Positions 11,686 to 32,700 of a DNA stretch of 64,000 nt are shown in pieces. Each line of letters opens with the position of its first letter. Position 1 is the stretch's first letter. Both the position numbers and the translations under genes were made by a program. The stretch is from Oikopleura dioica (taxonomy: Eukaryota; Animalia; Chordata). Below the pieces are notes generated by a model. It was given only the letters and a program-made list of their open reading frames with translations, searched no databases and was not told the origin of the DNA. The stretch lies in assembly GCA_907165135.1 (NCBI GenBank), contig OU015568.1, positions 3,658,001 through 3,722,000 of the forward strand, written 5' to 3'.

Positions 11686-13507
11686 TTACAATCCATTCGC
11701 TGTTCTTCTTGAAGAAATGATTCCAATGAGACCAGAAAGCAATCCAGCTAAGGCGACCATAGCTCCACCGATGTAGAAAGGCAGAATGTAGCTACCGGTT
11801 GACTGGACAATTTGACCCATTCCAACAGACACCTTAAAAGGATGATTTTCAAGATAACGCTCACGGTTGGATTCGCTTACAATCATACAGCTGATTCCAT
11901 TAAAAGCAGTGCTCAATCCAACACAGCTCATTAATTGGCCCTCCAGCTTCACCACTTTCAGGAAATCGGACAGTGTTACAAAAGAAAGTCCTCCCCAGCC
12001 ACCTAAGATTCATCGTATCGTAATTTAACTAGAGGGGAAATACCTTGAAAAGCTCCAGAATAGATACAAACGAAGGCAAAATGAATATTTGAAGGCATAA
12101 GAGGTAGTAGAAAGAATGATAGGGACAAGTTGAGGCAATTGAAGCAGAGGAAATAATGACGATTCATCCAGTCCCTATCTGATAAAATCCCGATCGGGAT
12201 TCTAAAGATTATTGATTCTGAAAAATTTTTAACGAAAATCTACCTGCAGGCGAGTTCGGAAGCGCCCATGATAGTAATCATCGATGCAGCAGTAACTGGA
12301 GTCAGGGAATAAGCACTTTGGGAAAAGGGGGAGACATAGAGGACTCCAGCAAAATATCCACCATTCAGGATCGCTTGAGCGAGCAAGTACAGGTACAACT
12401 CAGGGAGGGAGAAGATCTTACTGTTTTTCAGCTCGGCATTCTGATAATTTTTGTAAAGATGTGCGTCTTTGAGCTTTTCCTGTCAAATTGAGCAGTTGTC
12501 TGGTTTTCTTCCATCTCTTCTTGGTTTGCAATGAGTTTTTCTTCCTTTTTCTCGGCGATGATTTTGGCCTCTTTTGACTTTGGTGTATGCATGAGGGCTC
12601 CAGCAATGAGGAGGTTTAAATAGATTCCACCAAGGATCAAATAGTACCCTAAAAAGTAATAAAGCTTGCACGAGTTAAAAACAGATCGGATATGATGTTA
12701 TCCGAAAAAGAGGTGAAAGGAGTGCATACCTGGGACAGTGAATGTTTCCAGAAGCCATGCAATTATTAGGGGAAATAAAAGCATGCCAACTGAGGTACCA
12801 CATGATCCAATTTGAGTTGCCATCGTTCTTTTGGCTTCCCAATAAACTGCAATTTGATTTAGCGCGGCCATAAAAAGAAGTCCTTTCAGCAGGGCTTCAA
12901 AATCAGAAAACCATAATCTCCTTATTTTTTTATGATTATTTATAAATATTAAAAATAAAATTTTTTTGAGTAACTCAATTTTTATTCATTAGATTGTTGC
13001 CGAAATTTTAAAATCGTCTTTGTTGATAAAATATTGAAACCGTAACAAACATGACGGAAATGATGAAGAACGAAATAAGGGCCACACTGAAATCATACAA
13101 ACGTAATTATTGAATTCTTGCAATAAATTCACAACTCACGAGAAAAGCCGAACAAAGTAAAGCATCACATGCATCAAACCCACCAAAACGCCACTAACGA
13201 CCACAGTTCTTCTATTCCCAAGCTTTGCCAAAATCGGTGACCCAACAAGCCCTCCGACGATGATGCCGATCGAGAAGATTCCAGGGATGTAGTTGACCGT
13301 CACAGCTGATAAGTCGTAGAAACTTTGCATTGGCCCAAGAAGCACGGAGAAAGATCGGCAAAATCCAAAGACCTTTTTCGGAATTTTTATTGAAACTTCA
13401 GAAAAATGTCGAAAAATTAATTTTCCTTCAAAAATCCCTGCCAGAAAATAAACCAAAAACATAGCCAAAACTGTCGCCCAAGCCCACACTCCCCCATCTT
13501 TCTTCAT
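11686..13507 (-). CDS. Monocarboxylate transporter family (SLC16/MFS) protein
   Basis: N-terminal DGGVWAW motif matches the PDGG.GW signature of SLC16. Multiple TM helices, central charged loop, and C-terminal TGSY.LPFYIGGAMVAL. Multi-exon. Confidence 0.85.
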
Positions 13508-14044
13508 TTCTTCTCTGATTCTCAAGTCCTAATCTTCAAATCTCGGTTTATTTTGTCTCTCTTTCAGTTTCGTTGGTTTATTGTTACGCACTCAAAAAGG
13601 TGAGCCGCTCAATATTTTTTATTGTTCTTGACCATCATTTTTTTTCTTATTGTTTTTTTCTCGTTCTCGTAGTAAAAAAGGAAAAGTCAGGTTAACTTTT
13701 TGGCGAGGACCAAAAAATGCTGTGGGCGATATTGAACGATGACGCACCAACTTGAACCTGAAAGGGTTGAAAAATCGATGATAAAAGTGAGATTCTCTTG
13801 TTGTTATAAAATAGCTTTAGGGCGGGCGGAAATTCGGAGAAAAGCAAATTTGGATAATGATCGGCATTGGAAGTCAGAATGGCAATAAAGCAAACAATTC
13901 GTCGGTGAAGAAATAAATTGATGAAACTACTTTAAATTTATACAATAGGATAGAATAAGTAAAAAAGGTGTTGATGTTTACTTTTAAAAACACTTCCGTT
14001 TAGAGGTATTCATTTCTTTGGCAAAGAAAAATTCATTCCGCAAT

Positions 14045-14976
14045 ATGAGCCACTACAGCGGTTTCGGCAACGAAAAACATTTGCATTTTTTTGACGAAGA
14101 AGACAGTTCTTCTCCCGCTCGAAGACGTCTTCTTCGTGATTTAAGACGTCTAAAAGAAGACCCACCAACTGGTGTTGACGCCGTTCCCACGGAAGAGAAC
14201 TTGCTTTTCTGGAATGGTGTCATTTTCGGCCCTGAGAATACAGCCTTTGAAGGAGGAACCTTTCATCTGATTCTCTATTTCACAGAAGAGTATCCGAATA
14301 AAGCGCCGGAAGTGAAATTCACTTCAAAAGTTTTTCACCCAAATGTGTTTGCTAATGGCTCAATTTCTCTTGATATCTTGGAAGAGAACTGGTCTTCAAA
14401 TTACGATGTGTCTTCAATTTTGGTAATCAACATTTTTTAGAAAATGAATTAGTCTTCAGATCATGGCTGTTGATTTCGAGTCCTTTGGTTTTACCCGGCA
14501 TTTTTTTCCGGGCAACCCGCAGATTTTTCAGCGAGTTACTCGCACGGAGAGTCTTTTCACGGGCTACCCGCGTTACTTGTTTTCTCCTTTCCGCCGAGTA
14601 GCTCGCGATTACCCGCAACCCTTTTTGTCGAGCCAATCAGACGAGCAAATTTTCTTCTTTCTAGTCGAAATTTTCGCGAGTAGCTCGCGATTATCCTTTA
14701 CCCATTTACTCGATTTACTCGCACGGGTCTCCGCGCGAGTAACCCGTAGAAAAATCTGCGGGTTGCCCGGAAAAAACTGCAGGGTAAAACCAAAGGACTC
14801 GAAATCAACAGCCATGCTTCAGACAGTCTGAAGTTCAGACTTCGATTCGAAATCTTCTCGATGAACCGAATCCGAACTCGCCTGCGAATACCTTGGCTGC
14901 TCAGCTCTTTACTGAAAACAGAGCCGAATACGATAAGAAAATCGAGGAAATCGTCGAAGCAAGCTGGAGATCCTAA
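14045..14976 (+). CDS. RAD6/UBE2A/B-like ubiquitin-conjugating enzyme with catalytic Cys replaced by Ser
   Basis: [17 protein letters not shown]..., [15 protein letters not shown], and exon 2 (14839-14976) [26 protein letters not shown]. These closely match RAD6-family E2s. Confidence 0.92.
14462..14816. mobile_element. hAT-type MITE (355 bp) in the intron of the E2 gene
   Basis: Long (~85-90 bp) imperfect TIRs begin CATGGCTGTTGATTTCGAGTCCTTTGGTTTTACCC. 8-bp TSD CTTCAGAT/CTTCAGAC (14454-14461, 14817-14824). This explains the mirror ORFs 14463+ and 14815-. Confidence 0.9.
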
Positions 14977-15260
14977 TGAAAATTATGAGAGTAAAGTCGT
15001 AAATGCTCATTTCTTATAACAGCTCATTGCATACAGACCCGACAGGCTACCTTGGTACTGTAAATCTCCACTGAACAATCTACAAATAAAACAGAACCGA
15101 ATCACGATGAACTAATGAATTTCGAAAAATCAACATGGACCTATCCACTTCGAAAGAGCATAATGTCCAGAGCATTAAAATTTTAGTTTCGTCTGAAAAA
15201 TTGATCTTGGCACACGTGAAGGTTCTAAAAACGCTCTTTATTGGAAGTAAAAGCTAAAGA

Positions 15261-16312
15261 ATGAAACAGAATTATACAAACTTCTGGCAGAGAGAAAATT
15301 CTAGAGAAGAAAAAGAAGAAAATTTTAATGTGGAAATTTATCGTCCTGAATATTTTATTCGCAGGAAAGTTTTTGAAGGCAAAAAATACAAGAAAAAAGG
15401 TCTTTTTATGATTTTTATCATTGAAAAACGGAAGAAAGGGATGACCTTAGGAGCATTATTCGCGATGATTTCGAACAAATGGGCCGTAATGAGCGATTTC
15501 GACAATTTTCAAGGCGGAAAGACAAAAGCATCCATGGGAATTTGGGTGAGTCAAGCAAGTTTTCTTTTATTAGTACTTCGGGTCGTAATACAGTAAATAT
15601 GCGCTGTCCTTGAAGCTGTCAGAAAATTCACAAAATAGCCATTTTTCAGTGCTATAAAATTGTATTCTAGCGATATTGCTCACAAAACTCGCCTGGAATG
15701 GAAGCCTGTGATGTCAATTCTCTCACGTCTTTGAACAATCATCCAGCAAGTGTCATCATCAACAGAGTTCTTGGAGTACTTTCAGTCTCTTTTATGTTCA
15801 TTTCCTTCATTATTCTCAATTTTTCGACGCTTACTTTTTTCCGTCTGCCCGTGGAGACATTCAAACGCCTCATCCGAATTTCTTCCATTTTCATGCTCCT
15901 TGGATTTGCTCTTATATCTGTTACAACTGTCATTTTCGCAGTGGAGATCAAAAAGTCTTGGGATGCACAAGCAATAAGAAACTCTTGTATTTACTGTTAC
16001 ATTATGCAATGGGACTTTGGCTGGGCACTGTATCTCATTTGGTCAGAAGCTTTCATTATGATACCTACAGGGAAAGGATTTAATATGGCTAGGGTTAGGG
16101 TTAGAGTTCTTCTTTGAAGAAGAAAACACTAGAATGCAAATCTTAAAAAAACTTTTGAAGAAATCCTTACCTTAGCTATCATTTTAATCTGTCTGCCGAA
16201 AATTATGATACCTAATGAAAAATTTGACCCGGAAGAAAACTATGAAGAAGAAATGAAGGAGTTTCAGCCACCAAGAAAATACTCGTTTGATTATTCTGAT
16301 GGATACATTTAA
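15261..16312 (+). CDS. Claudin/PMP22/EMP-like tetraspan membrane protein (5' end uncertain)
   Basis: W...(S)MGIW motif in loop 1, two central TMs, and FGWALYLIW before TM4. The last exon 16176-16312 (AIILICLPK...YSDGYI*) is joined via a GG-AG intron. Confidence 0.75.
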
Positions 16313-17100: not shown

Positions 17101-20100
17101 TTGCAATCTTCCTCTGCTGATCCCCATTCCCCAGCTATTCTGAACGATGAGCTCAACGAACACTGCCACCAAATCCCGAATCATCAGAGCATGAAATGCT
17201 TCTTTTCAGAAGATGAAAAATTCTCACTGTTTTGTTCCTGCGGAGAGTCTGTCTGCGATGAGACCTGGGAAAAGACATGGAAGCACAACTCGCAAGAAGT
17301 TCAAGTCGACGAAGATGATATTACGAGAAGATTGACGCTCAAAGGCGGTTCGGCGAAAAATGGCTACTCGGAACTCGATATTTTCATGAAACACAGTCTC
17401 CAGGGCAATTTCACTTGTTTTTCGAAGTCAGATTCGTCATCGGAAGTTTCAATAATGGAATATCATATTGCCGTTCCTCATCTAGACGACAAGTTCCAAA
17501 TCGACGCGCGAATCCGCTCGCCTTATTCAGAAGATGCTCTTTTCACGACAAAAGTAGGAAAGGAAATCGAGCTCGAATGTAAAGCGCCTCTTGGAGAGCC
17601 GGAGCCGGAAATCAGCTGGTACAGAAACGACAAAGCAATTGACAATCACCGCCCGCGGAAAGTCCAAGGAAAATCCATTTTGACAATTCGATCTGTAAAG
17701 CTTGAAGATACCGGACTATACGGGTGCGAAGCAAGAGCTAGAGTTGGCTCTCAGTTATTCAGTAAATTCTCTGAAAGGGTAAAAATCCTGGTGGAGTCGA
17801 AGCCAAAGATTTTCGATCTTCTCATTTGCCCGGAAAAGAGAGTGAATTCAAGGGCTTCGCTGAGCTGTGAATTCAGGAACGGAGATTTTAAGATGATGAA
17901 CATTAATCTCTTGAAACAGTTTTGGAATCTCTGTTGTTAGAGGCGAGCCACTGCCAGAAATTTACTGGGAAAAATGTGAAAGTGATGAGAAAAAGAGCGA
18001 TCCACAGAGAAACGAACAAGGGTGTAAAAAGTGGGAAGGACCTAACAATACACATGTTAATGAAAATGAACGGACGGTGCGAAGTACGATCAATTTCAGG
18101 AATAGCTTCTTATGATTGAAATATTTTGTAATGGTAAAATTTTAACATTTCTAGCTTAGTTAGGAATTCACATACGGGCACTATACAGTAGACTACACTG
18201 TGTAAATTATGTCACAACAATAAAAGTATGAAATTTTCGATAAGTCTCAGAGAATCTTGAAGTTATCGTCTCTTATAAGCTTCTCTAGAAAAATCAAGCT
18301 CTCGGACTCCGGAGTCTACCGTTGCTGGGCGATAAATCATCTTGGAGAAACTCCAAGCCAGTGTGTTCAAACTGTTTATGAAAACATCGAAGTTGTCAAA
18401 CCCCTTTCACAAACTAAGTACGAAGGCGCAGATGCCAGCTTCTCCTGCGGCGGTGCTGGTGCGAAAGTGATTAGTTGGGAATTTTATCCGAAGAATGAAG
18501 ATCCAAAGATAGTCGCCTTTAGCAAAAGAGAGAGGGTGAAGGATGGAGTCGCGAAGATCTACTTTGAAGCTCAGAGTCTGTCAGACAGAGCGCGTAGAAA
18601 CGACAGACTGACGGCAAACTGGATCTGGACGAGGTCAAATTCACTGAATAAACTTGAGATCAAAAGAATCAACGAGCAAAACGCGGGGAAATATCTTTGC
18701 ACAGTCGTTTACGATGGCCCAAATGAGGAAAATGAACATTTATTAGAAGCGACATTGACTGTACCGAGCCAGTATGAAATAAGGGGCGCCAATGTTCAGA
18801 AATACGTCGGTATCAGTTTGGACAAGGACTCGGTTTGTAATGTTCATCTATGCGGTGTTACTTGCTCAGGTAAAGAAAAGACCGTAATTTGTTATCAAGG
18901 CTCATTTTTTTGAAGTTAAAAGTAATGTTAATGCGAAAAATAACTTATAATTATTGATGCATCCTTTGCAAATGAAGTGCTAAAAATATTTTTAAAATAA
19001 TTAAATTGAATTTTTAGGGGTCAATGCGAAATCAATCCAATGGAAGAGTCCTCATGAGAGTGAAATCACCGAAAAAGAGGTTGAAAAGATGATCACTCAT
19101 TCCGAATCTCGGAACTCGGAATCCGAAACCTTCTCAAGAATCAACTTTGGCTCCCTCGGCCCTGACAACATTCAAAAAGTCCTCGGTCGCTGGGAATGTG
19201 TTCTTATTCCGAGAAAACCTGGCAAAGCGAATGTAATAACGAAACAAGTCGATGTCTTGTTGAAGAGCAACGAAACGATGCAGAGAGACTTGATGAACAT
19301 TAAGCTTCAAGATTTGAATGTGGATGAATTGATTTCATTCCGCCCTAGTTTTTGCCCAGACAACTGTGTTTTTCTGATCGTTTATGGGGGCGACAAGGAT
19401 CGAGTTAAGATTTACAGCTTTCCGATTAGATCAAATTACCAATAGATCCCTTTTTCATAACTGATAAAAAGTCAACCCGAATTTTGGACACACTTTACTG
19501 CAAAAAATTCCTGAAGAGCTCAAAAATTGACCCGAAAATATCCCACCAAATCGCCATCATCCCCGCCTTCGAAGAACACACGCCTCGGGGCGAACTACAA
19601 TTCATAACTTCTCGCGGGATCATCCGCAAGAAACAAATCCAATCTCAACAGCTGGCGGAAGAGAATGGGATCTTCGCTTCTACCATTCTTCTGATCAAAC
19701 CAACAGCTTCAAATGATTTTCAACGAATAACCGCAAAGAAATTACAGCTCAATTTTCATGACACAAATACGTCGTTGTTGATTTCATGGGAAGAGCCGGA
19801 CATTCTTGAAATGGGAAGATATTACATAACGAAATTTCTGATCGAAATAAATTTGCCACAGCTGAGCGAGAAAAATGGAATCATTGAAGAAGAAATTTTG
19901 TCAGGAAAGAAAAAAATCGCAGTCAATCTTTCAAAATATTACTCTCACGAAGACCTACGTCAAGTCAAAGAAGTCCATGTGCGCCTTCGTGTCGTCAGTA
20001 GAATCTACCAATCTGAAGCAATCTCGAAGAGTCTCAACATTCTCATCCTCGAGGAGCCGGAAAAATCGCAACTTAGTATTGGACTCTTTATTGTTGCAAT

Positions 20101-20783
20101 GCTTGTGGCGATACTGGCGATTGGAACTGCTATCTGCACCTGTCTCTGTTTCCTGAGGCGGAAAAAGGAGGATTCCAAGCGAGAATCTGAGTCGTTGGAA
20201 ATTCCACCGCCAGAAAAAGGGTACACTGATGATTATGCTAGAGAATGGGATCAATTAAATCCACCGTCGGATATTTCTATAGCTGATTTCAGCCAAAATA
20301 GGGATGAGTTTCATTTTCATTAATTCTATCAAAAAAAATTGGTAAAAAACTCATAACAAGCGACCAAAGAGACAGTCACGCCGCTCGAATACAGAAGCAA
20401 ATTCTAGAGGACCAAGATTTTAACCAAAAGCGACCAAGGAAACGCGGCCGAAAGCGCCTTGCTAGACCTGCGGAAGATGACCCTTATGAAGGAGAAGACG
20501 AACTCGACGAGCCACAAGCAAAGTTTGTTCTTCCGCAAATGGATCCAAGCAGAAATTCGACATACAGTGATCAATTTACTGTTTCTGATCATGACGATGA
20601 TGATTGTAAGCTTGTTGCTCGTTTCATGTAAGAATAAATTCAGGTTATCGCTCAGGAAGATACGGAAATCGACCAGTAGGAATTGTTCCTCCGTATACGC
20701 CACCAAGAGCTGCAAGCCAATTACAGTACATTCCAAGCTACAATAGAGATGATGGACAGAAATCGATAAGATATCAAGCTGAT
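17101..20783 (+). CDS. Ig-superfamily single-pass receptor (several Ig domains plus FN3-like region; Robo/L1/DSCAM-like architecture)
   Basis: Ig motifs ELECKA..PEPEISWY, DTGLYGCEA, DSGVYRCWA and NAGKYLCTV. FN3-like LLISWEEP. TM IGLFIVAMLVAILAIGTAICTCLCFL. Tyr/Pro-containing tail. The start codon was not resolved. Confidence 0.8.
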
Positions 20784-26750: not shown

Positions 26751-29700
26751 TTAAAAGTTTTCGTAAGAAACATTATCAAGATCTTGTCCCGCAAGCGGAT
26801 TGGCAGACATCGCGCTTGACTGTCCAGCGATCAGAGCGTTCAAATTTGGTCCTGAAAAGGTCAATCTAAGAAGGACAAGTTCAAGGGTACCTTTAGCATC
26901 CTCGGCGTCAGAATCAACATAGATCTCCTTCGGCTCATTCAAATGTTCTTCAATGTCGAAATCGCTATTGAATGATGCTCGGCCATCGCTACTGCCGAAT
27001 GATGATTGTTGATCTTCATCATCGTATTCCAGAGCCTTAAAATCTATTATTTTCGCTTTTGCTTGGGTCTTACAATATTGATCATTCCTTCTTGTCCAAC
27101 CAGCTGATTCTTGTGCTGCTCGCCCGATGCCTGGTAAGCTTGTGACTCATTGTAAGCACCTTTGCTGGACATATCATCCATGTCGTATTTCATCGCTCTT
27201 TCTGATTGCAATTTTCGCTGAAAAAGATAAATACTTGTTATTCAAACACCTTCTTACCGCATATCGTTTTCGCATGCAGCACATGCAGACAATAATTCCA
27301 GCGCAAAGAACAGAAAGACCTCCTCCAATGGCAATCACAAGGATAAGCCATTCTTTATCGCCCCATTTGTCCTCTTCGATGACTTCTTCGCATTCTTCGA
27401 GTTTTTGCATATTGCAGCTCACCTAAAAATATGATGGATGCTTGAAATAAAGCCTTTACTAACCCTGATGTTGTAGGGCTCTGCTTTGAGAGTATTATGA
27501 GCTTCAACATCATTAAGAACAAATGCAATATCGAATGAAGTGAGAAGGTCTCTGTTTTCTTCCCCTGCACGCAGGGAATCAGTGAAGTTGCAGCTTGAAA
27601 TTGGAACACTGCAAGATTTGCTCTGATTTGATGATTTAACGACGTAAAAATTGATTTCTGTGTAGTATTCGACTTTTGGATCATCTTCAGGAGCAAGTGG
27701 ATCAGGGCGATTTTGGGTCTCGACTTTGTAAAGCTCAGTACTGTAGTCATAGTACTGAAAATGAAGGATGAAATAAGATCAAGAATCACAAACTTACGCA
27801 ATCACATGCATTTTTCCTGGGAAGAATGCTCTCGAAAAGATCGTTCATTTCTCCTTTGAATTTATTTGTGAGCGCTTCATTATCCCAGTCATCTTCTTTT
27901 GTTGACGTCACAAGTCCAACATGCTCCTCATCAAGAACAGTCACGACGATCGGAAGAGAGTTGTAAATGACAGACTGTCCGTTTTCAACTTTGCACTTCG
28001 ATTTGAAAAAATCGGGATATTTTTCGACATATGCGCAATCGTAATTTTCATAAAGAGGAGCTTCGTTTGCCACCTCGACTAAACAAGAGCTAGATTTGAG
28101 ACTCGAAAGAAGAGAAACCTGTGATTGTTGCTACAGCAAAGAAATTGTTGCTCTTGATATCCGGGATTTGCTTCAAGGTCTTGAGGTTGAATTTCATCGG
28201 GTCTTCTGGATCAGCTGTAACTTGGAAAAAGTCCTTGTTGTTTTGACATTGAGAAGCGCTGGAACCGCAGATGTAGGTTTCGGAAATTTTCTTGATTCTG
28301 CTTCTTCGATTAGTTTCATCACCATCTGCGTCGGAGACCTCGATTTGTGGGGTGATATCTTTGCCTGCTTCAGTTGTTCCTGCGAGAACATAATGAGCAG
28401 TTTTAAATGGAGCGATGAGAGGGCCATTGTCGTTGACATCTTCGACATTAACTGTCAGCAGAAGCTAGAAAAAATTGAGATTTGAGAAGTAGTCTAAAAT
28501 AAAACGAAAAAAATAGGCATGCAGTTTTTAATAAAAAATATTCTGGCACATTTCTCTCCTCTTGAAATGTCTGTAAGTATTTCCATATTAGTATTTTTTT
28601 TTGATAAAAAGTCTTGGCAACTTACTTTCGAGAGAAACTCCTAAAACAAAGATTTTTATACTGTACAAATTCATATAAAAATCATCTTTTTTGATGAAAA
28701 GCGAGCATTTTTTGGCGATGTTTTCTGATTCGAAAATTTATCTTACCGTTGACTGAAGGTTCTACAATTTCATGATGATAAATTACGATTTCTCTTTTCA
28801 ATGAAAAACTTACCCTTTGATTCTCATCAAGAACTCCATCACACTGATCATGGCAAAATTCAACGGTACATTTGCTGAAGTCATCTAACAAGTTGCACTC
28901 ATCATCATAAACATCGATTTCAAGTGTGAATTTATCATATTCTTCGCGGTTCAAGCCCTTTTCATTTGTACCAGGGATGTATTCCGCGGTTATTCCCATT
29001 TCAATTCTACCGGCGACCCAGTCAGAGCATCCAGTTGGTGGTTTATCGGCTTTATCAGTGACGGAGAAGATATTATCACAAGAAACTTCTTCAGCAAGCC
29101 CGGGACCGCATTTTTGGACATCTTCGTAGAAACCCTTAATTTTTGTAAATAAGTGTATGGAAAAACCGTAAAAGATCATACCTTGACGTTCTGGACGGTA
29201 TATTTGTTGACATCAGCTGACCATTTTCTTGAATCTTTATCAATAGCGCCGCAAAATGATTGCGCGTCGAAACCAGTTCCTTCTTTGATCGTTAGTTGTC
29301 TATCTTTTTCGTCAAGATCAGCGAAAGTTGGACCGTGGTCGTTGATGTCCTTAATCTTTGAAGAAATTTATAATGGCGAAAATTTAACCTTGACAAGAAC
29401 TTTCACGATCTCCTCAGATTGGCCTCCAGGTTGGCCTCCATCTGTAGCTCGAATTACCAGATCGTAAAAGACTTCCTTGTCGAGATGATCCTGTCCATTA
29501 TGATGATTTCAAAAACTTTTCTGGGGCCGGAAATCGTAAAAACTGCAAGTGCAGTTTTCTTCAGCTCGTCAAGACGAGTCGAATGATGGGTCTAACTCCT
29601 GATAATTCTAAGGATTGACCGGTTTACCGGCTGGTTACCGGAAAATACGTTGTCACCGGCCGTTTTTGTTCTAGAAGTGATAAACGGGTGATTGACCCCG

Positions 29701-32700
29701 GAACTTGTTCCTCATAGTCAGTTCTACTGCAGGGTAGAAGATGAAGATTGTATCAATACTCTGAAGAGAGTTATCACTAAAATTCTATTTTTGGCGAAAA
29801 TGGGACCGGAAATTAGGAACGTGCAGCAACAACAAAATATAAGTAAAAATTACTGTTTTTGGTGATAACTCTCTTCAGAATGTTGATACACCCTTCATCT
29901 TTTAGCCTGCAATAGAACTGACTATAAGGAACAGTTTCCTGGGTCGAGCATCTGTTTACCACTTCTAGAACAAAAACGGCCGGTGACAACGTATTTTCCG
30001 GTAACCAGCCGGTAAACCGGTAAATCCTTAGAGTTATCAGGAGTTAGACCCATCATTCGACTCGTCTTGACGAGCTAAAGAAAACTGCACTTGCAGTTTT
30101 TTTACGATTTCCGGCCCCACAAAAAGTTTTTTGAAATCATCTATTCAAGATTCCGTCCCAGCTGAGTTGATTTCTCTCATTCTCGAGCTTCGGAGTGATG
30201 ATTGGGCTTGCACCGAGATTTCCAGGTGTTAGTGAAGAGCCCTCACAAACATCCTTGTCTTCATCGGGATTGAACACATCGCCACCTTCAACAGAAAAAG
30301 GAGACTCTTGAGGCGTTGAAAATCGAATCCGACCATAGTTGAAATAGCATCGATCTTTATCAAGGGTTCTGAGAAGACAGTTTTAGTGGACTGGCTGAAA
30401 GTATTTTTACCTGATGTCGATTGGCTGAATAGTATCCTCAATTTTTTCATAAATCTCCATTATCATCGGATCTCCTTCATTATCTTTCGGAATGAAGATT
30501 TCCGGAGAGTGCTCATTTTCATCTTGAATGGCAAATCGGATCATCGTGTTTCCAGTAGGATCGGAAATCAAAGAATTGTCATTGGATTGTTCTGTATCGG
30601 AGCAAATTGCAGTCGCTTCATCGAGGTCAGCTGGGCATTGGAATGCATTTGTCTTGTCACTATCCTCGCAGTTTCCATTTGAGCAGTCGATGTTACAAGC
30701 TAAAAATATAAAAGAAAGTCGTCGTTCGTTTCAAAATACCTTGGACGGTGAATTCGAAGTTGAAATGAAATTGACCATCCATCATTTCTTGGTTGTTCTT
30801 GATCTTGGAGACACCATCGGCATCAATAAATTTGGCAGTACTTTTCATCTTAATTTGAGACTTGAAAGTTTTCTTTGTAATGGAAATGGCGTCAATCTGA
30901 AAGAATTCTGCAGCATCGAGAAGGCTAGAATTGGAAGTTTTGATACGGAAACAAGTTCTGGTGTTCAAATAGTCATCATCGTCGTCTTGAATTTGCGACA
31001 AATCGAAGACTTTGGGAGATTGCCCATTTGATCCATCCTTAACATTCCACGATCCGGCAGGAAGCGTGTACGCAGGGCTACCTTCCAGGCCATTGTAGAT
31101 TTGAAAGAGAGGTGCATTGATGTTCGAGTCAAAAATGACAATGCTCAATCTTGAGCTTACTCGTGTATCTGAACCCGCTGGAACGCAACATTGTTCGACT
31201 GTATTTCTATCTGCGTCACCATCAAGAGAACAAGCGCGAACTGTATAAATGTATGACTTGGCTTCCTGTCGATTCAACTGTTCCCCCTCACGCAATCTTA
31301 AAAAGTCGCTGTTAAAAGTCGCACCTCAATACAAGACTCGAAAAAGACAGAGAACGAGCAAATATTGTAAATTTTTTTCTTTATTTGCGCAAGTTACAAT
31401 TTGCTCGAAATGTCAATGTTCATGCTCGTAAATAAGTCTGACTCTAACGCATCGGATATTTGTTTAGAACATTCTCATTGCGATTCTTTCCTTACCTGAT
31501 TTGCAGGGATAAACTGCCCTCTTCTTTTAGGTAATCAGTTCCAAAATCTTCCCAACTTGTTCCCTTTTTATCGCCATTGACGACTTCGAAAATGCCAACA
31601 GCGTTGTCAGAATTTTTGATGTCGCAGAAGAAAACATGCCTGAACTGAACACTATTTTGATTTGTAAATGTCAGCTGAAGATTTTGAGATCCGGGCTTTT
31701 CATTTTCAATTGTCTTTACGAAATAATCTCCGGAAGAATCATATTCGAACATTGCTCCATCACCATCGAGAACACTTGGTGCTTTGTTTTTCTCTGTAAT
31801 TTCCAAGTTGACGGTGAAAATAGAGCATTTCGAAGCGCCATCAATCATCGTTCCTTCGTCGCATGCTTTGATATCAAGCATGACTGTATCAATTTCGCTG
31901 AATGCAAGTGCTTCTTCAACAGTTACTTCCAACGGATCAAGTTGGGCATTGAAAACAGTTTCGGTATCTACTGAAAACTTGTTAGCGCAACTGACAGAAT
32001 TGTCGCTTTTTGAACAGCTAGTTTTGTCGATTGAAAGTTTGAACTTTCGATTATCATCTCTTTCATCGATGTCAGTGATGATGATTCTATGAGGATCGTT
32101 TCCATTGGAATACGCAGTAAGAACAGTACCGACGGCATTTTTTTCCTCAAGCTTTCCAAACTCGCTGCAGTAAGAGCATTTTAACTGACCAGGTCCGGCT
32201 TCAAACTTTCTCGTTTGTCCGTTGAAAAATCGAGGGGGATTGTTGTTGATGTCCTGGATGAAAACAGTAATGTCGAAAGACTGCTCTTGCATGTAATAAT
32301 CTTCGTTGAATGCACATGATGGCATGCCTTTGCAAGGTTCATTTTGGGAACATCCGTTTCGGAAGTCAGCTGGCACTTTCTCTTTTGCAATGACATTGAG
32401 AATGAGGTTTGAAACTCGAGTAGAATTTGATCGGCAATTACCAGGATCTGCTTCTGGGTCGCATTCTGCATTGAATTCACCATTGTTTTTCAATTTTATG
32501 AAGACAGCACTTTCAGGACCGGCCGGTTGATCATCTGCTGCAGTGCCGTAGTCGATCTCAAAACTTGTGCTAAAATCATCTCCAGCAGTCGTTTTTAGTT
32601 CACTGAGCTCAATTCGTACTTCCCACTTTAAATCAAGGTCAGGATCGGATGCAGAAATCAATAGCTTTTCTGAGCTATCTCGATCTTCTGTAATGTAATT

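What the first reader, a model, noticed from the sequence alone, without database searches (positions are those of the whole stretch)
14045..14976. RAD6/UBE2A-like E2 with the active-site cysteine replaced by serine (natural pseudo-enzyme)
Seen: [15 protein letters not shown], with codon TCT at 14366-14368. Established: RAD6/UBE2A/B reads HPNVYADGSI-C-LDIL, and this Cys forms the ubiquitin thioester. Cys-to-Ser E2 mutants are used experimentally as inactive or oxyester-trapping, dominant-negative reagents. The rest of the fold, including HPN, is intact and there is an added acidic N-terminal extension. Inference: a retained paralog acting as a UEV-like scaffold, ubiquitin trap or competitor for RAD18/BRE1-type E3s. 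This is interesting in a lineage known for a remodelled DNA-repair toolkit.
Basis: partly seen in the sequence, partly recalled or inferred. Interest (0 to 1): 0.72.

Follow-up and report, generated by a model that had tools for sequence, protein, structure and literature searches.

The report
Cysteine-free RAD6-like E2 variant in Oikopleura
The tunicate Oikopleura dioica keeps, beside its normal RAD6 ubiquitin-conjugating enzyme, a diverged copy with no cysteine at all (serine or alanine at the catalytic position in four lineages) that evolves under purifying selection, so it is most likely a non-catalytic E2 variant and not a sequencing error or a dead gene.

Summary
Window 14045-14976 (+) holds a two-exon, 171-aa gene (exon 1 14045-14422, exon 2 14839-14976), identical to the annotated O. 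dioica OKI2018_I69 protein g9463. It is a UBC-fold protein whose nearest solved relatives are UBE2A/B and RAD6. Codon 108 (TCT, 14366-14368) aligns with catalytic Cys88.

New evidence:
- Independent marine-metagenome contigs carry orthologs with TCG (Ser) or GCT (Ala, in two contigs). A contig from another organism label keeps TCT.
- None of the three ortholog proteins contains any cysteine.
- Pairwise dN/dS for exon 1 is 0.16-0.27, and it stayed below 1 in 500 of 500 bootstraps. The Ala-bearing branch is the most constrained (about 0.08).
- The 21-residue N-terminal extension is 17/21 invariant.
- Two canonical, Cys-bearing RAD6 copies lie about 9.7 Mb away on the same contig and share the SSIL|TSI intron position.

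Best reading: a conserved RAD6-derived pseudo-E2 that acts by binding. The RING/E1 face (helix 1) is kept, while the backside centre changes S25 to D in every ortholog. The Ala ortholog argues against an oxyester "ubiquitin trap".

Expression is untested, because the two RNA runs laid no reads at all. The case is modestly interesting: an independent origin of a UEV-type pseudoenzyme.

The parts
14045..14422 (+). Exon 1 (codons 1-126): N-terminal extension plus UBC core up to ...YDVSSIL
   Evidence: Translation; Pfam UQ_con 108.6 bits; UBE2A/B best PDB matches; identical to P0001 residues 1-126
14045..14107 (+). Lineage-specific N-terminal extension (residues 1-21, [21 protein letters not shown]), absent from canonical RAD6
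   Evidence: Alignment A1; 17 of 21 residues identical in three orthologs; pairwise dN/dS for this segment 0.04-0.19; predicted disordered, pLDDT below 50
14177..14179 (+). Codon 45 GAC (Asp), at the position of RAD6 Ser25, the centre of the canonical E2 backside
   Evidence: GVDAVP in all orthologs against GVSGAP in canonical RAD6; role of S25 taken from PMC4605308
14366..14368 (+). Codon 108 TCT (Ser), at the position of catalytic Cys88
   Evidence: Orthologs have GCT (L007, L008) and TCG (L009). The X5 contig is unchanged here
14423..14838 (+). Intron (GT..AG, phase 0) at the same SSIL|TSI position as intron 2 of the canonical RAD6 gene
   Evidence: The intron is about 48 nt in L007. The X6 contigs join 14438 or 14454 to 14834
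14462..14816 (.). MITE-like foldback element inserted in the intron (89-nt terminal inverted repeats, 93% complementary)
   Evidence: At least 10 near full-length copies at 93-96% identity elsewhere in the genome. Absent from the X6 and L007 introns
14839..14976 (+). Exon 2 (codons 127-171 plus TAA): [17 protein letters not shown]...EASWRS, the C-terminal helices of the UBC fold with the Ser120-equivalent kept
   Evidence: Translation; Pfam UQ_con positions 103-139; alignment A1
13980..14002 (+). Upstream block with ACTTCCGTTT, shared by three lineages about 45 nt before the ATG (candidate promoter element; weak evidence)
   Evidence: Alignment A2 and sequences. The L009 copy is visible in the sequence but shifted in the alignment
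15085..15090 (+). AATAAA about 110 nt after the stop (possible polyadenylation signal; weak, common by chance in AT-rich DNA)
   Evidence: Sequence

Best explanation
This is a single-copy gene of the Oikopleura dioica species complex. It arose by DNA-level duplication of RAD6/UBE2A and became a catalytically dead E2 variant. It keeps the UBC fold, the HPN motif, helix 1 (ARRRLLRDL) and the Ser120 'gateway' residue. It has no cysteine anywhere, so it cannot carry a ubiquitin thioester (shown). One lineage has Ala at the catalytic position and is the most constrained, so the retained function does not need a nucleophile there (inferred from selection). The best-kept surface is the helix-1 / loop-4 face that E2s use for E1 and RING E3s. 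The canonical backside is remodelled in all orthologs (S25D, G26A, A27V, D50G), and a conserved aromatic/acidic N-terminal tail has been added. The most likely mode of action is therefore by binding: a non-chargeable regulatory subunit or competitor at RAD6-cognate E3/E1 docking sites, with the new tail recruiting a lineage-specific partner (inferred, not shown).
For: Fold and subfamily:
- Pfam UQ_con matches both exons.
- UBE2A/B/RAD6 are the best solved relatives at E about 1e-46.
- The AF2 model shows UBC topology at mean pLDDT 70.

Loss of Cys is old and shared:
- OKI has TCT, the X5 contig TCT, L009 TCG, and L007/L008 GCT.
- There are zero Cys in P0001 and in the exon-1 products of P0002 and P0003.

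Selection:
- Exon-1 dN/dS is 0.16, 0.27 and 0.19 for the three pairs.
- The bootstrap 95% upper bounds are 0.33-0.47, with 0 of 500 replicates at or above 1.
- Three-point branch omega is 0.08 for the Ala lineage.
- There are no stops or frameshifts in any copy, and all three sequenced copies (OKI, L007, L009) keep GT after SSIL/SLL.

Origin and context:
- The intron position is shared with canonical RAD6, so this is not a retrocopy.
- Canonical Cys-bearing RAD6 is present at G000:C1:13.31 and 13.38 Mb.
- Surface mapping comes from alignment A1. The roles of S25, G23/D50, loop 3, Q93 and S120 come from PMC4605308 and PMC10018343.
Against: - There is no expression evidence. The two RNA runs laid 0 reads on the stretch, which the tool marks as no test. 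No cDNA-derived ortholog spanning the exon junction is in the protein collection.
- dN/dS of 0.16-0.4 is far looser than expected for canonical RAD6.
- In the Okinawa and X5 lineages the RING-contact loop WSPTY has become WSSNY and QNR has become EEN. This weakens the 'keeps the RING face' argument for this particular genome.
- No partner was identified. Whole-genome scans for BRE1 and RAD18 were inconclusive.
- Exon 2 of the orthologs was seen only through the read laying tables.
Confidence: 0.62

Rival explanations
1. Serine-based E2: in the Ser-bearing lineages E1 slowly charges Ser108 with ubiquitin as an oxyester. This would give a long-lived E2~Ub that acts as a trap or as a dominant-negative for RING E3s, which is the reader's 'ubiquitin trap'.
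For: Ser is kept in three of four lineages, with a synonymous TCT/TCG difference. HPN, with the oxyanion-hole Asn, and the Ser120 gateway residue are retained. Established knowledge (mine, not tested here): engineered Cys-to-Ser E2s form stable oxyesters.
Against: The L007/L008 lineage has Ala and is the most constrained branch (omega about 0.08). Tyr82 is Phe in all orthologs. Gln93 is Glu in three of four lineages, and Asn94 is Glu in three of four.
Confidence: 0.12
2. Decaying or unexpressed duplicate: a pseudogene that merely has not yet picked up a stop codon.
For: The catalytic residue is lost. The rate is higher than in canonical RAD6. A MITE sits in the intron of the Okinawa copy. There is no transcript evidence.
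Against: The frame is open and the splice donor intact in four or more independent sequences separated by dS 0.15-0.7. dN/dS is significantly below 1. The N-terminal extension is conserved 17/21. The upstream block is conserved.
Confidence: 0.08
3. Neofunctionalised binding module outside the RAD6 pathways, in the way AKTIP/Ft1 and Drosophila Pendolino are UEV-type proteins working at telomeres. The UBC fold would be a scaffold and the conserved N-terminal [14 protein letters not shown] tail the main interaction motif.
For: The backside is remodelled in all orthologs, and the RING loop is further altered in the Okinawa lineage. The strongly conserved new tail has omega 0.04-0.19. UEV-type precedents: PMC4481533, PMC4481407 (titles and abstracts only).
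Against: Helix 1 and loop 4 remain RAD6-like, and no partner is known. This overlaps with the best explanation and differs only in which partners are bound.
Confidence: 0.15
4. Sequencing or assembly error, or a rare allele at the catalytic codon.
For: The Okinawa reference comes from a single assembly.
Against: TCT appears in an independent contig of another run (X5). Non-Cys codons appear in three other metagenome contigs from different samples.
Confidence: 0.01

Closest known systems
RAD6 / UBE2A / UBE2B (E2 ubiquitin-conjugating enzymes)
   Same: It has the UBC fold. Identity to animal UBE2A is about 64-68% over the core. It keeps HPN, helix 1 ARRRL.RD, the EEYPNK loop, the [10 protein letters not shown] segment with Ser120, and the C-terminal helices. 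It shares an intron position with the O. dioica RAD6 gene.
   Different: Catalytic Cys88 is Ser (Ala in one lineage) and the protein has no Cys at all. All orthologs carry Y82F, S25D, G26A, A27V and D50G. There is a 20-residue N-terminal extension, and evolution is much faster. Among 151 RAD6-like proteins retrieved here, only these three lack the Cys.
UEV-type E2 variants (UBE2V1/UEV1, UBE2V2/MMS2, TSG101 UEV domain, AKTIP/Ft1, Pendolino)
   Same: A UBC-fold protein without the catalytic cysteine, retained by selection and presumed to work by binding.
   Different: The origin is independent, inside the RAD6 clade. There is no Pfam UEV match (only UQ_con and a weak RWD hit). HPN is kept. It is restricted, as far as found, to the Oikopleura dioica complex. 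The backside position that binds ubiquitin in MMS2/UbcH5-type proteins is Asp here.
Engineered E2 Cys-to-Ser / Cys-to-Ala / Cys-to-Lys mutants (for example the UBE2A variants in PDB 8btl and 6cyr)
   Same: The same position is replaced in an otherwise RAD6-like protein. One search shows a UBE2A chain with Lys at that position among the best matches.
   Different: These are natural alleles fixed in several lineages, with further co-occurring surface changes.

Membership tests
UBC-fold / E2 superfamily (Pfam PF00179 UQ_con) | Sequence match to the UBC core over its whole length | tested here: met
   Exon 1 matches profile positions 1-101 at 108.6 bits. Exon 2 matches positions 103-139 at 30 bits. 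Both are above the 27-bit cut-off.
UBC-fold / E2 superfamily (Pfam PF00179 UQ_con) | alpha/beta UBC topology (N-terminal helix, four-stranded sheet, C-terminal helices) | tested here: met
   The AF2 model has H24-38, four strands, H122-134, H144-152 and H154-170. Mean pLDDT is 70, from a shallow alignment.
RAD6/UBE2A/UBE2B subfamily (active E2) | Closest relatives are RAD6-type E2s rather than other E2 subfamilies | tested here: met
   UBE2A/B/RAD6 chains score E 1e-46 to 1e-39, and the next subfamilies about 1e-27.
RAD6/UBE2A/UBE2B subfamily (active E2) | Catalytic cysteine (Cys88) forming the ubiquitin thioester | tested here: not met
   The position is Ser108 (TCT) here, with Ser or Ala in the orthologs. 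The protein has no Cys at all.
RAD6/UBE2A/UBE2B subfamily (active E2) | HPN motif and Ser120 gateway residue | tested here: met
   HPN is kept in all orthologs. NPNSPAN is kept in exon 2 of the Okinawa copy.
RAD6/UBE2A/UBE2B subfamily (active E2) | Canonical backside (Ser25 centre; Gly23/Asp50 contacts for Bre1) | tested here: not met
   S25D and D50G occur in all orthologs, while G23 and E49 are kept. Roles are taken from PMC4605308 and PMC10018343.
RAD6/UBE2A/UBE2B subfamily (active E2) | Charging by E1 and discharge with RAD18/BRE1/UBR E3s | not testable with these tools
   This needs biochemistry.
UEV (ubiquitin E2 variant) pseudoenzymes, as a functional class | UBC fold lacking the catalytic cysteine, maintained by selection | tested here: met
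UEV (ubiquitin E2 variant) pseudoenzymes, as a homologous family (Pfam UEV PF05743; UBE2V1/2 clade) | Sequence membership in the UEV or UBE2V clades | tested here: not met
   The Pfam scan at E<=0.01 returns only UQ_con and a weak RWD hit. The nearest relatives are RAD6-type.
UEV (ubiquitin E2 variant) pseudoenzymes, as a functional class | Defined binding partner (an E2 such as UBC13, ubiquitin, or an E3) | not tested
   No complex prediction or experiment was done, and no partner was identified.

The most novel reading that the evidence does not exclude
A chordate has evolved, from RAD6 itself, a dedicated non-chargeable regulator of RAD6-dependent ubiquitination (PCNA, H2B or N-degron pathways). 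It would dock on the cognate E3 or E1 through the retained helix-1 face and bring in a new partner through its conserved [14 protein letters not shown] tail. This would be part of the rewired genome-maintenance system of a lineage reported to lack classical end joining.
Probability: 0.15. Interest if true: 0.7.

Novelty: new variant of a known kind. Interest (0 to 1): 0.45.

Why it matters
Catalytically dead E2 variants such as MMS2/UEV1, TSG101 and AKTIP are important regulators, but the known ones are ancient and far removed from any active E2. Here the dead copy and its active parent sit in the same small genome and are still about 65% identical. That gives a natural experiment on which surfaces must change when an E2 turns into a binding protein: the active site, Y82, the backside S25/D50, and a new tail.

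The serine/alanine alternation between lineages answers in nature a question usually put with engineered mutants: is a residual nucleophile needed? If the protein modulates RAD18 or BRE1 function, it would bear on how O. dioica maintains its genome with a reduced repair toolkit. If it is not expressed, it is merely a slowly dying duplicate.

Tried and rejected
- Expression: one reads search and one lay were allowed. The two oligo-dT RNA runs chosen (X14, X16) laid 0 reads on 13950-15050 at 88% likeness. The tool marks this as no test, because the organism or lineage was not shown to be in those runs. Expression stays open.
- More orthologs: the JGI metagenome scan found only canonical RAD6 of other organisms, at 59% and 45% identity. 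A search of residues 85-171 of P0001 and a search with the most divergent ortholog found nothing beyond P0001-P0003. P0058 looked promising by score but is a canonical RAD6 with an internal duplication.
- Partner E3s: whole-genome scans for BRE1 (PF08647) and RAD18 (TIGR00599) gave only marginal coiled-coil or RING-only matches. I do not claim presence or absence.
- Literature: nothing was found on Oikopleura E2s or on a natural Cys-less RAD6 paralog.
- Phylogeny: dating the duplication needs the three-exon canonical O. dioica RAD6 as one row. Exon-wise identities are 60/73/69% to the canonical O. dioica exons and 64% to Ciona. They do not resolve the timing.
- Full-length work used the database protein P0001 by reference, not a joined model of my own.
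- Not run: the large representative search (clusters at 50% identity would hide Cys-less RAD6 variants), a fold search (the sequence matches are already decisive), and a complex prediction (no specific pair is claimed).
- X6: the catalytic codon could not be read with certainty in either X6 haplotype contig, because not all of their differences were listed.

Full report
**What is there.**
The window is G000:C1:3658001-3722000 of a 64-Mb, 19-contig genome. The gene is annotated in NCBI as Oikopleura dioica OKI2018_I69 PAR g9463, a 171-aa protein held here as P0001. Reading the DNA gives the following model:
- Exon 1 is 14045-14422 (126 codons).
- The intron is 14423-14838, with GT..AG ends.
- Exon 2 is 14839-14976 (45 codons plus TAA).

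My first exon-2 coordinate was off by one and was corrected. The two exon translations match P0001 exactly, so P0001 was used by reference wherever a full-length protein was needed.

**Checking the observation.**
- Pfam UQ_con matches exon 1 (108.6 bits) and exon 2 (30 bits).
- Against solved structures, UBE2A, UBE2B, C. elegans UBC-1, plant UBC and yeast RAD6 lead at E 1e-46 to 1e-39. UBE2D and UBE2N types follow at about 1e-27.
- In the printed alignments, Ser108 (TCT, 14366-14368) sits exactly on Cys88 of ...HPNVYADGSICLDIL....
- The 20-21 residue N-terminal extension ([21 protein letters not shown]) precedes the canonical SxPARRRL start.
- An AlphaFold2 model from a shallow alignment gives the UBC topology at mean pLDDT 70. 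The extension is disordered.

**The canonical copy.**
A six-frame search of the whole genome finds only one copy of the Ser gene. It also finds two canonical RAD6 loci on the same contig, at 13.31 and 13.38 Mb. Each has three exons and reads HPNVYADGSICLDIL. Their second intron lies between SSIL and TSIQ, the same position and phase as the single intron of the Ser gene. The Ser gene is therefore a DNA-level duplicate and not a processed retrocopy.

**Is the Ser real, and how old is it?**
Four independent sequences bear on this.

| Source | Relation to the Okinawa protein | Catalytic codon |
|---|---|---|
| Okinawa assembly (window) | reference | TCT (Ser) |
| P0002, on two contigs from different ENA assemblies (L007 from a Tara Oceans run, and L008) | 90% identical | GCT (Ala) |
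| P0003, on contig L009 | 78% identical | TCG (Ser) |
| X5 contig (a run with another organism label), covering 14177-14438 | closest to Okinawa (dS 0.155) | TCT (Ser) |

- L007 and L008 differ from each other by one synonymous site, so they are independent observations of Ala.
- The X5 contig has 19 differences over its span. All 19 are listed, and none falls in codon 108. Its protein is a fourth variant with GSISLD.
- None of the three database orthologs has a single cysteine in the regions compared. P0001 has none in all 171 residues.

By parsimony the ancestor of the four lineages already had Ser, and one lineage then went from Ser to Ala by a single first-position change.

**Selection.**
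- Exon-1 dN/dS (NG86) is 0.16 for OKI-L007, 0.27 for OKI-L009 and 0.19 for L007-L009, with dS of 0.33-0.64.
- Codon bootstraps give 95% upper limits of 0.33-0.47. None of 500 replicates reached 1.
- A three-point decomposition gives branch omega of about 0.34 (Okinawa), 0.08 (the Ala lineage) and 0.24 (L009).
- The N-terminal extension is 17/21 invariant and has omega 0.04-0.19.
- All copies keep an open frame. The three sequenced copies keep the GT donor.
- An upstream block with ACTTCCGTTT recurs about 45 nt before the ATG in all three lineages.

This is not neutral decay. It is, however, much looser constraint than one expects for RAD6 itself.

**Which surfaces are kept.**
Canonical numbering is the paralog numbering minus 20. 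Comparisons come from alignment A1.

Kept in all orthologs:
- helix 1 (ARRRLLRDL)
- G23, N37 and E49
- the EEYPNK loop
- HPN and D90

Kept in the Okinawa exon 2 as well: [10 protein letters not shown] with Ser120.

Changed in all orthologs: F13L, S25D, G26A, A27V, D50G, Y82F and C88S/A.

Published roles of the changed positions:
- S25 is the centre of the canonical backside, and S25R cripples Rad6 activity.
- Loop 3 with E49/D50 is the Bre1 R6BR docking site. Q93 and S120 tune the active site (PMC10018343).

The Okinawa and X5 lineages additionally changed QNRWSPTY to EENWSSNY. L007 has EERWSPTY and L009 keeps QNRWSPTY.

The pattern is this. The E1/RING-facing helix 1 is the most RAD6-like part. 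The backside and active site are remodelled, and a new conserved tail is added.

**Mechanism.**
Shown:
- The protein cannot form a thioester.
- The loss is shared by all lineages found.
- The coding sequence is under purifying selection.

Inferred:
- Because the Ala lineage is the most constrained, the function does not need a nucleophile. This disfavours the oxyester "ubiquitin trap".
- S25D argues against a role as a backside ubiquitin binder.

The most likely mode is a binding role: a non-chargeable decoy or regulatory subunit at the E1 or RING docking sites used by RAD6, or a scaffold whose new tail recruits another partner. I put about 0.62 on "selected, non-catalytic E2 variant acting by binding". 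I put far less on any particular partner.

**What is not known.**
- Expression is untested. The two RNA runs I could lay gave 0 reads and count as no test. No cDNA-derived ortholog exists in the protein collection.
- BRE1 and RAD18 could not be identified with confidence by family scans.
- The time of duplication is unresolved. The paralog is about 64-68% identical to every canonical animal RAD6, including the O. dioica one.

**Comparison with known things.**
Functionally it belongs with the UEV-type pseudo-E2s. By descent it does not: there is no Pfam UEV match, and its nearest relatives are RAD6-type. I found no description of a natural Cys-less RAD6 paralog or of Oikopleura E2s in the searchable literature. 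I rate it a new variant of a known kind and give it moderate interest.

**Side observations.**
- The intron of the Okinawa copy was enlarged from about 48 nt (L007) to 416 nt by a roughly 355-nt foldback MITE. At least 10 near-full-length copies at 93-96% identity exist elsewhere in the genome.
- Both haplotype contigs of run X6 lack the MITE.
- The two canonical RAD6 copies differ by about 1.2%, and by a 1-nt insertion that changes the last residues of the 13.31-Mb copy.

Noticed in passing
window 14462-14816: A foldback MITE of about 355 nt (89-nt terminal inverted repeats, 93% complementary) sits inside the intron, flanked by CTTCAGA-like direct repeats. At least 10 near full-length copies at 93-96% identity lie on other contigs. 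The element is absent from the same intron in the X6 haplotype contigs and in the L007 lineage. It may belong with the foldback element another note reports at 29499-30143 of this window; that was not compared.
   Followed up: partly
G000:C1:13313374-13315000 (L003) and G000:C1:13384076-13386000 (L002): There are two canonical RAD6 genes about 70 kb apart, with 30 mismatches in 2605 aligned bases. Their second introns differ greatly in length (about 90 against about 700 nt). The 13.31-Mb copy has a 1-nt G insertion that changes the C-terminus from ...VVEQSWKEDDE to ...VVEQRLEGGR. This could be a real recent segmental duplication, an assembly duplicate, or a homopolymer error.
   Followed up: partly
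L007:1-234 and L009:150-219 against window 13790-14044: The upstream non-coding DNA is strikingly similar between the Okinawa and L007 lineages. An ACTTCCGTTT (ETS-like CGGAAGT on the other strand) block recurs in all three lineages shortly before the ATG. The region also faces a minus-strand ORF at 13136-13525, so it may be a shared bidirectional promoter.
   Followed up: no
Read-laying table, window 14242-14454 in run X6: Run X6 holds two haplotype-like contigs of this gene at similar depth (55 and 59). They differ from each other at several exon-1 sites, suggesting high heterozygosity or a pooled sample. The catalytic codon could not be read with certainty in either, because not all of their differences were listed.
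   Followed up: no
window 15698-16117 and 17101-20323: Downstream neighbours are a small multi-pass membrane-like ORF and several immunoglobulin-domain-like exons on the + strand. There is no evident functional link to the E2 variant.
   Followed up: no
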